IMG/VR virus record: IMGVR_UViG_3300017917_001342 | Location: 124,001 to 188,000 of that record | Strand: one strand, 5' to 3' | Length of the DNA: 64,000 bases | Shown: in pieces, positions 3,028 through 29,920 of the stretch | How positions within the stretch are numbered: the first letter of the stretch is position 1 | Layout of the letters: every line of letters starts with the position of its first letter | Notes under the pieces: model-generated | Told to the model about the DNA's origin: nothing | The model's database searches: none | What the model saw: the letters and a program-made list of their open reading frames with translations, nothing else | Made by a program: the position numbers and the translations under genes

Positions 3028-3116
3028 AGGCATCCGGCGACGATGGAGTGTCGTGCTGGTCTCCAAAACCAGTGTCTGTAAAGACTTAGCGAGTTCGAAT
3101 CTCGCGATGCCTGCCA
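3028..3116 (+). tRNA. tRNA-Trp(CCA) with long variable arm
   Basis: AGGCATC/GATGCCT, CTGGT-CTCCAAA-ACCAG, GCCA. Confidence 0.8.
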
Positions 3117-5518: not shown

Positions 5519-5593
5519 GGGTTTGTAGCTCAACGGTAGAGCAGGTGTCTCTAAAACATCGAGGTGTGGGTTCGAATCCCATCTTACCCGCCA
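5519..5593 (+). tRNA. amber suppressor tRNA (CTA)
   Basis: GGTGT-CTCTAAA-ACATC; acceptor has two U.U mismatches; GCCA. Confidence 0.8.
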
Positions 5594-7117: not shown

Positions 7118-7522
7118 GTGATGCTAGAATGTTTGATCATGGGCGATAGTATTGCTGTTGGCATTGCTCAGCAACGCCCCGAATGTGTAGTTGAAGCCAA
7201 AATTGGTATCAACAGCATGGATTATGTTAATGGGTTGTACTTTTTCTATGCAGTACCAGATGCAAAGACTACCGTGATTAGTCTTGGTAGTAACGACTTT
7301 GACAATAGCGAAACTTATCCTGTGCTGTTGACACTGCGTGAAGAAATCAAGGGTAACGTGTTGTGGATTTTGCCTGCACGAAATGACGAGGCACGTAATG
7401 TTATGCTAACCATTGCTCGAGAGCGTGGTGACGCAGTTGCAGATACTCGTGCTTGGCCATTGTCACCAGACGGTGTTCATCCTACCGTAAAAGGATACAA
7501 AGGACTGGCACAGTCTTGGTAA
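7118..7522 (+). CDS. SGNH/GDSL hydrolase
   Basis: GDSIAVG, SLGSND, DGVHPTVKGY blocks. Confidence 0.85.
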   Translation: MMLECLIMGDSIAVGIAQQRPECVVEAKIGINSMDYVNGLYFFYAVPDAKTTVISLGSNDFDNSETYPVLLTLREEIKGNVLWILPARNDEARNVMLTIARERGDAVADTRAWPLSPDGVHPTVKGYKGLAQSW

Positions 7523-7530
7523 AGAATAAT

Positions 7531-7612
7531 GCTCACGTATCCCCCTCCGCTACGAACGGAGAGTCAGGTAATTGGATGGAAGATGGGGGTTCGAGTCCCT
7601 CCGTGAGTACCA
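7531..7612 (+). tRNA. atypical D-armless tRNA-Arg(ACG)
   Basis: GCTCACG/CGTGAGT, CTCCG-CTACGAA-CGGAG directly after a 7-nt linker, 23-nt variable region, T arm, ACCA. Confidence 0.7.
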
Positions 7613-7812
7613 TATAAAGGAGAATGCACTATGCATGGTTATCAATATCTATTGCCAGCATGTTTGATAGCATGGGCTGTTGCTGTTGTCACACTGTTTC
7701 AATGGCCGCCCTGTGCTAAAATGTATTGGGCAACAGATCAACGATTGAATTGTGTATTGACATCCTGGCACGGTCCTGTACTAAACAATGGTACGTGGAC
7801 CTGGTAAATTTT

Positions 7813-29039: not shown

Positions 29040-29920
29040 CACGATATTAACGTTGTGAAACGTGGATGTTGTGTTTACGCATTGGGGGTTTAGCCTCAAC
29101 AGGATAAGTGCAGTGATGCACCCAAAGCTAGAAAGCCTACATACTAGCGCCAGCAGTGGTCCATCTAAACAAGCCTGAACTAGACTTGACTCGGGTTAAA
29201 CCGAAAGCAAGTCCCGTCCGTAGAAAGGCGGTAGGCAGTAAGTTAGGAATAGTGTCCGAAAGGATAGTTGCAGAGCCAGTCGGTGAGCGATAAGAGGGTT
29301 GGCGCCCAAACACTGTTCAGCCAAACTAACGAATGCTGAAAGTTAACAGGTAGGTACAGAGTCTGAGCCCGCAAGCAAAGGCATGGTACCATTTCGAGAG
29401 TGGAAGGGTTAGGCCCCGGATACTTGAAGAAACACTGATTAGTCCGCAAGACGAAAGGTATGAGGTGTGCTGTATTGGGTATGTCAAAAGCATATTCAGC
29501 AGCCGAGGTAGCACATCTCGGATAGGTTGCAAAATCAGCTAATGGTAAGCTAATTCCCTTCTAAGGAATCGATTGCAGGTTCAACTCCTGTTTTTGAAAA
29601 ATGCAAAGTCTACCTCGGTATGTAGTGTAAGGTGTCAAATACTTGAGGCGCAAGCCAATCAAGTTCAACAAAGCTCGCAAGGCAGCGTTGATTTGTGCTA
29701 GAAGTTTCGTAGCCCGCAAGGCTTAATGGTCCGCAAGATCAACGGAAAACAAGGTGCAGAATAGCTACATACGACGAGTCTACTGCCTGACTCTAAAAAC
29801 GGCGACACTGTTAATGGACTAGGTTACCGCAAGGGACTTAGTGGATGTCGGAAGAAAGCGGCTCGCAAGGCTGGCAATAATGTCCGAAGCGTTAACATCG
29901 AACGTGTAATCTCAGCGTTT
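29040..29920 (+). ncRNA. GOLLD-like large ncRNA (5' boundary uncertain)
   Basis: ~0.9 kb without credible ORF, at least 9 GCAA/GAAA-capped hairpins, GGTAGGTAC..GAGTCTGAG, GAGGTAGCACATCTC and terminal GTAATCTCAG blocks recalled from GOLLD; tRNA-cluster context. Confidence 0.6.

What the first reader, a model, noticed from the sequence alone, without database searches (positions are those of the whole stretch)
7531..7612. tRNA-Arg(ACG) with the D arm removed and D-loop-like sequence relocated to the variable region
Only TATCCCC separates the acceptor stem from a perfect anticodon arm (CTCCG-CTACGAA-CGGAG). The variable region AGTCAGGTAATTGGATGGAAGAT contains a D-loop-like AATTGG, and its GGAT can pair with ATCC of the linker. 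This would rebuild the elbow with swapped topology. It is the only ACG decoder in the window.
Basis: partly seen in the sequence, partly recalled or inferred. Interest (0 to 1): 0.65.

Follow-up and report, generated by a model that had tools for sequence, protein, structure and literature searches.

The report
Phage arginine tRNA with rewired D-arm
This is a real arginine tRNA gene of a 519-kb freshwater phage, and it belongs to a widespread family of phage arginine tRNAs, absent from the papers I could search, that have no D hairpin but keep its pieces in a different order, so annotation programs miss them.

Summary
Window 7531-7612 (+) has a 7-bp acceptor stem, a perfect ACG anticodon arm, a T arm and an encoded CCA. 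Only 7 nt stand where the D arm should be, and 23 nt lie between the anticodon and T arms.

It is not a decayed gene. I found 89 distinct relatives with the same layout: in 69 IMG/VR phage loci, 13 tRNA arrays in bacterial genomes or MAGs, and at least 7 cultured phages (Rhizobium, Xanthomonas, Stenotrophomonas, Microbacterium), where none of the six records I opened annotates it as a tRNA. All three stems covary strongly. 88 of 89 carry Arg anticodons (ACG, TCG, GCG, TCT, CCT).

Instead, linker positions 11-12 (7541-7542) covary with positions 38-37 (7568-7567). The motif that follows, UAAYYGGA, matches the D loop of ordinary phage tRNA-Arg, including the A20 arginine identity base, and its R15-like base covaries with the base before the T stem.

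My reading: the D-stem 3' strand now follows A9, and the D 5' strand plus D loop sit in the variable region, rebuilding the normal core with swapped connectivity. Charging and decoding are untested. No description was found in the literature.

The parts
7531..7537 (+). Acceptor stem, 5' strand (tRNA positions 1-7)
   Evidence: Pairs with 7602-7608. All 7 pairs show compensatory changes and 100% of cells are paired in 45 and 68 relatives.
7538..7539 (+). U8 A9
   Evidence: TA in 89 of 89 distinct family members. It was not part of any search pattern.
7540..7544 (+). 5-nt linker TCCCC. Proposed equivalent of the D-stem 3' strand (canonical 22-25) plus position 26. C11 and C12 (7541-7542) pair with G38 and G37 (7568-7567).
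   Evidence: Pair types CG/GC/UA/AU at both pairs. 98.9% of cells paired in alignment A1 and 98.5% in A2. Both pairs rank among the top mutual-information pairs.
7545..7561 (+). Anticodon arm: 5-bp stem and loop CUACGAA, anticodon ACG at 7552-7554
   Evidence: Read directly. All 5 pairs covary. U33, C35, A37 and A38 are nearly invariant.
7562..7566 (+). 5-nt connector AGTCA (positions 32-36) between the anticodon stem and the short helix. A32 and A36 are conserved.
   Evidence: Column counts: A32 in 33/40, A36 in 37/40.
7567..7569 (+). GGT: proposed equivalent of the D-stem 5' strand (canonical 11-13). G37 and G38 pair with C12 and C11.
   Evidence: Covariation.
7570..7577 (+). AATTGGAT: relocated D loop. 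Proposed equivalents are A14, R15, Y16, Y17, G18, G19, A20 and U20a.
   Evidence: The D loop of the ordinary tRNA-Arg(ACG) at the same genomic place in a sister phage reads AACTGGAT, differing at one of eight bases (C for T at Y16), and it matches the family consensus exactly. GGA occurs in 88/89 members, in 31/35 ordinary Arg tRNAs and in only 26/317 non-Arg tRNAs of the same arrays. The R15-like base covaries with the base before the T stem: AU 63, GC 4, other 1.
7578..7584 (+). GGAAGAT: return strand. The last bases are proposed to act as variable-loop 46-48, with U54 (7584) as Y48.
   Evidence: AGAT or AAAT/AAAC is conserved. Some members insert an extra hairpin just before GAU, where class II variable arms sit.
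7585..7601 (+). T arm: 5-bp stem and loop TTCGAGT
   Evidence: The loop TTCGA is kept in nearly all members (TTCAA in four), including those found by the covariance model alone.
7602..7612 (+). Acceptor stem 3' strand (7602-7608), discriminator A73 (7609), encoded CCA (7610-7612)
   Evidence: CCA is encoded in 73/89 members. The only strain polymorphism seen inside the gene is A7609G.

Best explanation
The element is a functional elongator tRNA-Arg(ACG) of a 519-kb freshwater phage. It belongs to a conserved, phage-borne class of tRNA-Arg whose core is rewired.

In secondary structure it is a three-way junction of acceptor stem, anticodon arm and T arm. I propose that the D-arm parts are all still present but connected in a different order:
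- After U8-A9 the chain runs straight into what is normally the D-stem 3' strand (positions 10-13) and on into the anticodon stem.
- After the anticodon stem a short connector leads into the D-stem 5' strand (positions 36-39; the inner two pairs, 11:38 and 12:37, are Watson-Crick).
- Next comes the D loop (A14, R15, Y16, Y17, G18, G19, A20 equivalents).
- Then a short return strand ends in variable-loop-like AGAU and enters the T stem.

The three new joints (9 to 22, 45 to 10, 21 to 46 in canonical numbering) connect residues that are neighbours in the normal L-shaped core. So the usual tertiary contacts (U8-A14, R15-Y48, G18/G19 with the T loop) and the distance from anticodon to elbow could be kept.

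The phage has no ArgRS, so the host enzyme would charge this tRNA through the retained A20-like base, C35 and G36. Host TadA would convert A34 to inosine. The tRNA would then read CGU, CGC and CGA, which make up 63% of the phage's Arg codons.

Shown: the gene, the family, the stems, the 2-bp helix, the conserved D-loop motif, the Arg-only anticodons.
Inferred: the 3D fold, charging, decoding, and why phages keep this form.
For: 1. Family. 89 distinct sequences share the layout. They come from 69 IMG/VR loci, 13 genome or MAG loci inside dense tRNA arrays and cultured phages.
2. Selection on structure. 99.2-99.4% of cells are paired, and compensatory changes occur in 16-18 of 19-20 pairs. No shuffle of 500 reached the observed paired fraction or covariation score, and slid controls fell to 34-46% paired.
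3. The short helix 11:38 / 12:37 shows CG, GC, UA and AU types.
4. The Levitt-like pair reads AU 63, GC 4, other 1. Over all 89 members it reads AU 83, GC 5, GG 1.
5. U8 A9 is invariant in 89/89, and the T loop reads TTCGA in nearly all members (TTCAA in four).
6. The D-loop motif, with GGA, is that of ordinary tRNA-Arg. GGA is Arg-specific in these arrays: 31/35 Arg against 26/317 other tRNAs. A20, C35 and G/U36 are the bacterial Arg identity set (PMC9976931).
7. Anticodons: ACG 51, TCT 21, TCG 8, CCT 5, GCG 3 and UAU 1. The single non-Arg member is also the only one with GGU instead of GGA.
8. Complementary distribution. None of 45 family-bearing loci has an ordinary tRNA-Arg(ACG). The sister phage L003 has an ordinary one at the syntenic site, after an 86%-identical SGNH-like gene. 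One contig (L037) carries ACG, TCG, TCT and CCT members, all in this form, and no ordinary Arg tRNA in the 10 kb held.
9. The genome has no other ACG tRNA and no ArgRS. CGT + CGC + CGA make up 63% of Arg codons.
Against: - There is no direct evidence of transcription, processing, charging or decoding. The one RNA run covers only the neighbouring ORF.
- The proposed helix is only 2 Watson-Crick pairs. RNAalifold and single-sequence folding do not predict it, and the fold energy is no better than shuffles (z = 0.34).
- The outer layers (10:39, 13:36) are mostly mismatches.
- Most members were found with a pattern that fixed TAAYYGGA, AGAT and GGTTCGA, so conservation of those columns is partly by construction. 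The independent support is the 6 distinct D-hairpin-less sequences and the roughly 25 model-only members.
- The G-C Levitt-like pairs are few and may stem from two or three lineages. One member has G-G.
- The 3D rewiring is reasoned from the known yeast tRNA-Phe core, not modelled.
- Microbacterium phage Zooman carries both an ordinary and a rewired ACG tRNA, so replacement is not strict.
Confidence: 0.7

Rival explanations
1. The RNA is a conserved tRNA-like molecule that is not used in translation, or not mainly. It might act as a decoy or sponge for host tRNA-targeting defence nucleases or for ArgRS, or as a regulatory or priming RNA.
For: - The architecture departs from what EF-Tu, the ribosome and modification enzymes normally see.
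- tRNA arrays of phages and plasmids are discussed as counter-defence (PMC12803027; PMC12409363, listed).
- No expression or charging data exist.
- Zooman keeps an ordinary ACG tRNA beside it.
Against: - Every feature needed for translation is under selection: a 7/5 acceptor/T branch, encoded CCA, U33, A37 and a perfect anticodon arm.
- Anticodons shift among five Arg anticodons while the Arg identity bases are kept.
- The form replaces the ordinary ACG tRNA in 45/45 loci.
- One contig (L037) has four Arg isoacceptors in this form.
- A decoy would not need a matched set of anticodons.
Confidence: 0.15
2. It is a functional D-armless tRNA-Arg in which the long connector is simply a flexible or differently folded variable region, as in mitochondrial D-armless tRNAs. 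In this view it makes no canonical D-loop/T-loop and Levitt contacts, and the 2-bp covariation merely extends the anticodon arm.
For: - Only 2 Watson-Crick pairs are seen, and energy models see three stems only.
- Mammalian mitochondrial tRNA-Ser(AGY) works without a D arm (my own knowledge of mitochondrial tRNAs; the review PMC4394434 surfaced but I did not read it).
Against: - The strict conservation of U8, A9, A14-like, GG and the T loop is unlike mitochondrial armless tRNAs. So are the identity to ordinary Arg D loops and the R15/Y48-like covariation.
- Length variation is confined to the stretch after GGA.
Confidence: 0.12
3. It is a decayed tRNA pseudogene with its D arm deleted, or an assembly artefact.
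For: ARAGORN does not call it. The Rfam score is barely above threshold. The sister phage has a normal gene at this place.
Against: - 89 distinct relatives in independent assemblies and in cultured, finished phage genomes, with compensatory changes in every stem.
- The same sequence is present in contigs from other freshwater studies, with a single difference in the gene.
Confidence: 0.02

Closest known systems
Canonical bacterial and phage tRNA-Arg (Rfam RF00005; identity set A20, C35, G/U36, N73)
   Same: 7-bp acceptor stem, 5-bp T stem with a TTCGA loop, 5-bp anticodon stem, loop CUACGAA identical to E. coli tRNA-Arg(ACG), encoded CCA, U8 A9, a D-loop sequence AAYYGGA with the A20-like base, and location in a phage tRNA array.
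   Different: There is no D hairpin. The two D-stem strands are contributed by segments on either side of the anticodon arm, only two Watson-Crick pairs are kept, and the D loop lies between the anticodon arm and the T arm.
Mitochondrial D-armless tRNAs (metazoan mt-tRNA-Ser(AGY), nematode mt-tRNAs)
   Same: A few nucleotides stand in place of the D hairpin. In secondary structure both are three-way junctions.
   Different: The mitochondrial forms lose the conserved GG and T-loop elements and have short connectors. Here those elements are conserved and relocated, the connector is 16-20 nt or more, and the context is bacteriophage with the standard bacterial translation apparatus.
Class II tRNAs (Leu, Ser, bacterial Tyr) and allo-tRNAs / tRNA-Sec-like species (Mukai et al., PMC5389517)
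   Same: A long region lies between the anticodon and T arms, and unusual tRNAs occur in phage tRNA clusters. A few family members do carry an extra hairpin there.
   Different: In the window and in most members the long region has no covarying hairpin. Class II and allo-tRNAs keep a D hairpin. The acceptor/T branch here is the standard 7/5, not 8/4 or 9/3.
Permuted tRNA genes of Cyanidioschyzon merolae and other algae
   Same: The order of tRNA parts along the gene is changed.
   Different: In the algal genes the 3' half precedes the 5' half, and a circular intermediate restores a normal tRNA. Here the termini are normal and the permutation is internal, so the mature RNA itself would be rewired.

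Membership tests
tRNA (Rfam RF00005) | Score at or above the curated gathering threshold | tested here: met
   29.8 bits against a threshold of 29, E 2.8e-4. Marginal, because the D-arm positions are deleted.
tRNA (Rfam RF00005) | Acceptor stem, anticodon arm and T arm with conserved loops | tested here: met
   Covariation in all three stems.
tRNA (Rfam RF00005) | D arm as a local hairpin (stem 10-13/22-25 closing the D loop) | tested here: not met
   Only 7 nt lie between the acceptor and anticodon stems. The Rfam alignment deletes 15 model positions.
Bacterial tRNA-Arg identity | C35 and G36 or U36 | tested here: met
   Anticodon ACG at 7552-7554. 88/89 family members have NCG or NCU anticodons. 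Identity set taken from PMC9976931.
Bacterial tRNA-Arg identity | A20 in the D loop, contacted by ArgRS | tested here: inconclusive
   An A follows the conserved GG (7576) in 88/89 members, as in ordinary Arg tRNAs of the same arrays. Whether it occupies the A20 position in 3D cannot be tested here.
Bacterial tRNA-Arg identity | Aminoacylation with arginine | not testable with these tools
   Needs a charging assay.
Mitochondrial-type D-armless tRNA | Loss of the D-loop/T-loop elements (GG, T-loop consensus), with a short replacement loop and a short variable region | tested here: not met
   GG and TTCGA are conserved and the connector is 23 nt. ARAGORN's mitochondrial mode does not find it.
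Class II (long variable arm) tRNA | A base-paired variable arm plus a normal D arm | tested here: not met
   A possible hairpin at 7564-7575 is not kept in relatives. No D hairpin.
Permuted or split tRNA gene restored by processing | 3' half upstream of the 5' half, termini inside the gene | tested here: not met
   The acceptor strands are at the two ends and CCA is encoded at the 3' end.
Rewired-D-arm phage tRNA-Arg family (model R1, defined here) | Layout acceptor-UA-5 nt-anticodon arm-7 nt-UAAYYGGA-...-AGAU-T arm, with pairs 11:38 and 12:37 | tested here: met
   95.9 bits to R1, against 35 bits or less for ordinary tRNAs. The window sequence was among the 45 used to build R1, so it matches partly by construction. 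Relatives that were not used to build it score 46-98 bits.

The most novel reading that the evidence does not exclude
This would be a natural, widespread structural class of elongator tRNA in which the tertiary core is built from the same parts in a permuted strand order. It is specific to arginine, carried by phage tRNA arrays that turn up in bacterial assemblies from several phyla, and missed by ARAGORN and by the GenBank records I checked. If it is charged and decodes, the cloverleaf connectivity is not required by bacterial ArgRS, EF-Tu, RNase P, TadA and the ribosome. The form may also give phages a tRNA-Arg that escapes host enzymes or nucleases that read the D arm.
Probability: 0.55. 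Interest if true: 0.88.

Novelty: new variant of a known kind. Interest (0 to 1): 0.82.

Why it matters
- Outside mitochondria the tRNA cloverleaf is almost universal. A conserved family that keeps the core's parts but rewires their order would test which features of tRNA architecture the bacterial translation apparatus really reads.
- It exposes a blind spot. ARAGORN misses these genes, and none of the six GenBank records of cultured phages that I opened annotates them. In this phage the missed gene is the only decoder for about half of all Arg codons.
- The family is present in cultured phages with tractable hosts, so charging, structure and a possible role in the contest between phage tRNAs and host tRNA-targeting defences can be tested directly.
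- It also offers a natural scaffold for tRNA engineering.

Tried and rejected
- ARAGORN in standard, intron, relaxed and mitochondrial modes gave no sensible call.
Comparative data reject that pairing.
- My own first idea, a variable-arm hairpin UCAG-GUAA-UUGG with a GNRA loop (7564-7575), is not conserved in relatives.
- An intron or a processing-restored canonical tRNA is rejected: removing any single segment leaves no complete cloverleaf.
- RNAalifold finds only the three long stems.
- T5-like coliphage hits (36-42 bits, 'tRNA-OTHER' in one record) share the TAACTGG...GGAAGAT-T-arm stretch. Their 5' part does not fit the model (R1 skips 16-20 nt there), so I did not count them as members.
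- Reads: contigs of public runs show the phage in freshwater samples of many studies. They give no information on expression or ends of the tRNA. The low polymorphism inside the gene (1 against about 2 expected) is not significant.
- No ArgRS gene in the phage. No promoter or terminator signal beside the gene beyond chance.
- Eight literature searches and three papers read found no description of such tRNAs. The library lacks most subscription journals, so absence is not proof.

Full report
**Where the window lies.** The window is bases 124,001-188,000 of a 518,643-bp IMG/VR virus record with direct terminal repeats. Contigs nearly identical to the region occur in pond, freshwater, aquatic and sediment metagenomes from 13 studies. 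The genome carries 55 tRNA genes that ARAGORN calls, plus a tmRNA; 46 of the tRNAs are in this window. The Arg tRNAs it calls are CCT, TCG and three TCT. No ACG tRNA is called anywhere.

**The observation.**
- A 7-bp acceptor stem (7531-7537 with 7602-7608; the first pair is G-U).
- U8 A9, then five further bases (7540-7544).
- A perfect anticodon arm (7545-7561) with loop CUACGAA.
- 23 nt (7562-7584).
- A T arm (7585-7601) with loop TTCGAGT, then A73 and an encoded CCA.

The gene fills the gap between an SGNH/GDSL-like ORF (7118-7522; weak Pfam hits) and a 58-codon ORF with a good ribosome-binding site (7631-7807). Rfam's tRNA model matches at 29.8 bits, just over its threshold. That alignment deletes the D arm and inserts 20 nt in the variable region. 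ARAGORN misses it in every mode.

**It is not a wreck, it is a family.** A sister phage contig (L003) has an 86%-identical upstream protein. At the same place it has an ordinary tRNA-Arg(ACG), followed directly by tRNA-Ser(GGA). That could suggest decay in our phage. Two pattern scans of IMG/VR say otherwise.
- The first scan fixed only the anticodon arm and T loop and asked for a long gap. It returned 12 loci. Eleven of them carry six distinct D-hairpin-less sequences, and all six share the same internal motifs.
- The second scan used those motifs and returned 82 loci. Most were this architecture; the rest were ordinary tRNAs hit by chance.

A covariance model (R1) built from 45 distinct sequences separates the family cleanly. 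The window scores 95.9 bits, and the best ordinary tRNA in the genome scores 35. Searched over the fetched loci, R1 found about 25 further members that did not match the search motif, giving members in 69 IMG/VR loci.

The same pattern over one genome per prokaryotic species gave 13 loci with members. All 12 that I scanned with ARAGORN hold other tRNA genes, ten of them 13-23 tRNAs within 8 kb, in MAGs or genomes of Alphaproteobacteria, Acidobacteria, Bacteroidota and Clostridia.

In GenBank phages, members occur in:
- Rhizobium phage RHph_I1_18 (86.5 bits)
- Microbacterium phage Zooman (79.5 bits)
- Stenotrophomonas phages RAS14 and DLP_6 by the model, and CM1 by BLAST only
- Xanthomonas phages Xoo-sp13 and BUDD by the model, and X1 by BLAST only

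In the six annotation tables I opened, none marks it as a tRNA. In the Rhizobium phage record the locus-tag series even skips a number at that spot.

**Structure from comparison.** On the 45-sequence MAFFT alignment, the acceptor, anticodon and T stems are paired in 98-100% of cells. Compensatory changes occur in 14 of their 17 pairs. No shuffle of 500 reaches the observed paired fraction or covariation score, and sliding the partners drops pairing to 34-46%. The 68-sequence alignment gives the same picture. These genes are under selection for tRNA structure.

It is paired in 71.6% of cells, with no compensatory change, because GG stays fixed while linker positions 11 and 12 vary.

Positions 11 and 12 instead covary with positions 38 and 37, the two bases just before the conserved UAA.
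- Pair 11:38 reads CG 59, UA 4, GC 3, AU 1.
- Pair 12:37 reads CG 41, GC 19, AU 5, UA 2.
- Each has a single unpaired exception.

In the window these are 7541:7568 and 7542:7567. Energy-based methods do not predict this 2-bp helix; it rests on covariation alone.

**The relocated D loop.** After that helix comes UAAYYGGA (7569-7576 in the window).
- In the sister phage's ordinary tRNA-Arg(ACG), D-loop positions 14-20a read AACTGGAT. That matches the family consensus and differs from the window's AATTGGAT only at the first pyrimidine.
- Ordinary Arg tRNAs from the same arrays mostly have AAYYGGA or a close variant.
- GGA (G18, G19, A20) is found in 31 of 35 ordinary Arg tRNAs but in only 26 of 317 other tRNAs.
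- A20 is the main bacterial arginine identity element, together with C35, G/U36 and N73 (PMC9976931).

Among the 89 distinct members, 88 have GGA. U8 A9 is invariant, although it was never part of a search pattern.

The base I equate with R15 (7571) covaries with the last base before the T stem (7584, the place of Y48). The counts are A-U 63 and G-C 4, with one exception, on the 68-sequence alignment, and 83/5/1 over all 89. This is the pattern of the Levitt pair. The pair was not part of the model to which the alignment was fitted.

Some members (phages BUDD and DLP_6, locus L068) carry an extra small hairpin just before the final GAU, where class II variable arms sit. This supports reading the terminal AGAU as the 3' part of the variable loop.

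**The model.** Put together, family positions 36-46 correspond to canonical 10-20 (D 5' strand plus D loop). Family positions 10-14 correspond to canonical 22-26. The last bases before the T stem correspond to 46-48.

Relative to a normal tRNA, three joints are broken (9-10, 21-22, 45-46) and three are made (9-22, 45-10, 21-46). From the known L-shaped core (yeast tRNA-Phe; my knowledge, not a tool result):
- A9 lies against the 12-23 pair.
- Position 45 lies against pair 10-25.
- Position 21 lies next to 46-48.

So each new joint links spatial neighbours. The stack of anticodon stem, two non-Watson-Crick layers, two Watson-Crick pairs and one more layer has about the length of the normal anticodon-plus-D stack. 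This is inference and needs a structure. A plausible origin is a tandem duplication of the D-plus-anticodon segment followed by loss of the outer halves, the usual route to circular permutation. I found no clear intermediate.

**Function.**
- Anticodons in the family are ACG 51, TCT 21, TCG 8, CCT 5, GCG 3 and UAU 1. This is after correcting two script mis-parses by eye.
- The single non-Arg member is also the only one with GGU in place of GGA.
- One contig (L037) carries ACG, TCG, TCT and CCT members, all in this form, with no ordinary Arg tRNA in the 10 kb held.
- None of 45 family-bearing loci has an ordinary tRNA-Arg(ACG), although many have ordinary CCT, TCT, CCG or TCG genes.
- In our phage, CGT, CGC and CGA make up 32%, 19% and 12% of Arg codons in long ORFs. 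The rewired gene is the only phage-encoded ACG tRNA, and no ArgRS gene is present.

The anticodon loop equals that of E. coli tRNA-Arg(ACG), the substrate of TadA (my knowledge). The simplest reading is an arginine-charged, I34-modified elongator tRNA that stands in for the ordinary one.

Why this form persists in phages is open. It could be neutral spread of a single invention. Anticodon changes within the Arg box keep the identity, which would explain why the family is Arg-only. Alternatively it could escape host factors that read the D arm.

**What is missing.** There is no evidence on expression. The one RNA-library run with part of the stretch covers only the upstream ORF, and contigs cannot show ends. 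Strain variants differ from the window at 18-33 of 1,201 positions but at only one inside the gene (A7609G, the discriminator). That is in the expected direction but not significant.

**Novelty.** Rfam has no dedicated family. Eight full-text searches and three papers read gave no description of a D-hairpin-less or rewired phage tRNA-Arg. The nearest report is of 8/4 and 9/3 allo-tRNAs in bacteria and alphaproteobacterial phages (PMC5389517). I rate this a new variant of a known kind: a tRNA with an undescribed core topology. I am confident that the family is real (about 0.95), moderately confident that it is a working tRNA-Arg (about 0.75), and less sure of the exact 3D rewiring (about 0.6).

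Noticed in passing
window 3028-3116 (+): This tRNA-Trp(CCA) is 89 nt long. It has a 5-bp D stem and a long variable arm (hairpin GTCT-GTAA-AGAC). Trp tRNAs are normally class I.
   Followed up: partly
window 5519-5593 (+): An amber-suppressor-type tRNA (anticodon CUA; ARAGORN labels it Pyl) sits in the array. TAG ends only 43 of 467 long ORFs. Opening TAG lengthens ORFs no more than opening TGA or TAA does, so there is no sign of recoding.
   Followed up: partly
L076:6155-6238 (-): A member of the rewired family has anticodon UAU (Ile, AUA) and GGU instead of GGA. It is the only non-Arg member and possibly an identity switch.
   Followed up: partly
L010:1729-1815 (+): This tRNA-Arg(ACG) has a normal D arm plus a 17-nt variable region, on the same contig as a rewired CCT member (L010:2103-2181). 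It may be a relative or an intermediate form.
   Followed up: no
L113:6545-6637 and L117:6336-6425 (-): ARAGORN calls tRNA-Ile(UAU) genes of 90-93 nt next to rewired Arg(TCT) genes, in tRNA arrays of Acidobacteria MAGs.
   Followed up: no
L102:1470-1544, L103:1470-1544 (T5-like coliphages, e.g. BASEL phage DaisyDussoix): A tRNA-like gene shares the stretch TAACTGG-GGAAGAT-T arm with the family, but its 5' part does not fit the family model. It is variously unannotated, 'tRNA-OTHER', 'tRNA-Ser', or overlapped by a hypothetical ORF.
   Followed up: partly
window 29527-29600 (+): ARAGORN's third tRNA-Arg(TCT) has an odd 5' end (TTGCAAA AT CAGC ...) and lacks U8 A9. It may be a doubtful call. A similar one occurs in L024.
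   Followed up: no
genome C1:311343-311751 (-), outside the window: The phage encodes a tmRNA, marked with an asterisk by ARAGORN, with tag ANDNVAPSYALAA.
   Followed up: no
window 7585/7601 and the family T stems: The first T-stem pair (49:65) is G-U in half of the family members (34 of 68). In the window it is G-C, and the window's G-U is the next pair.
   Followed up: no
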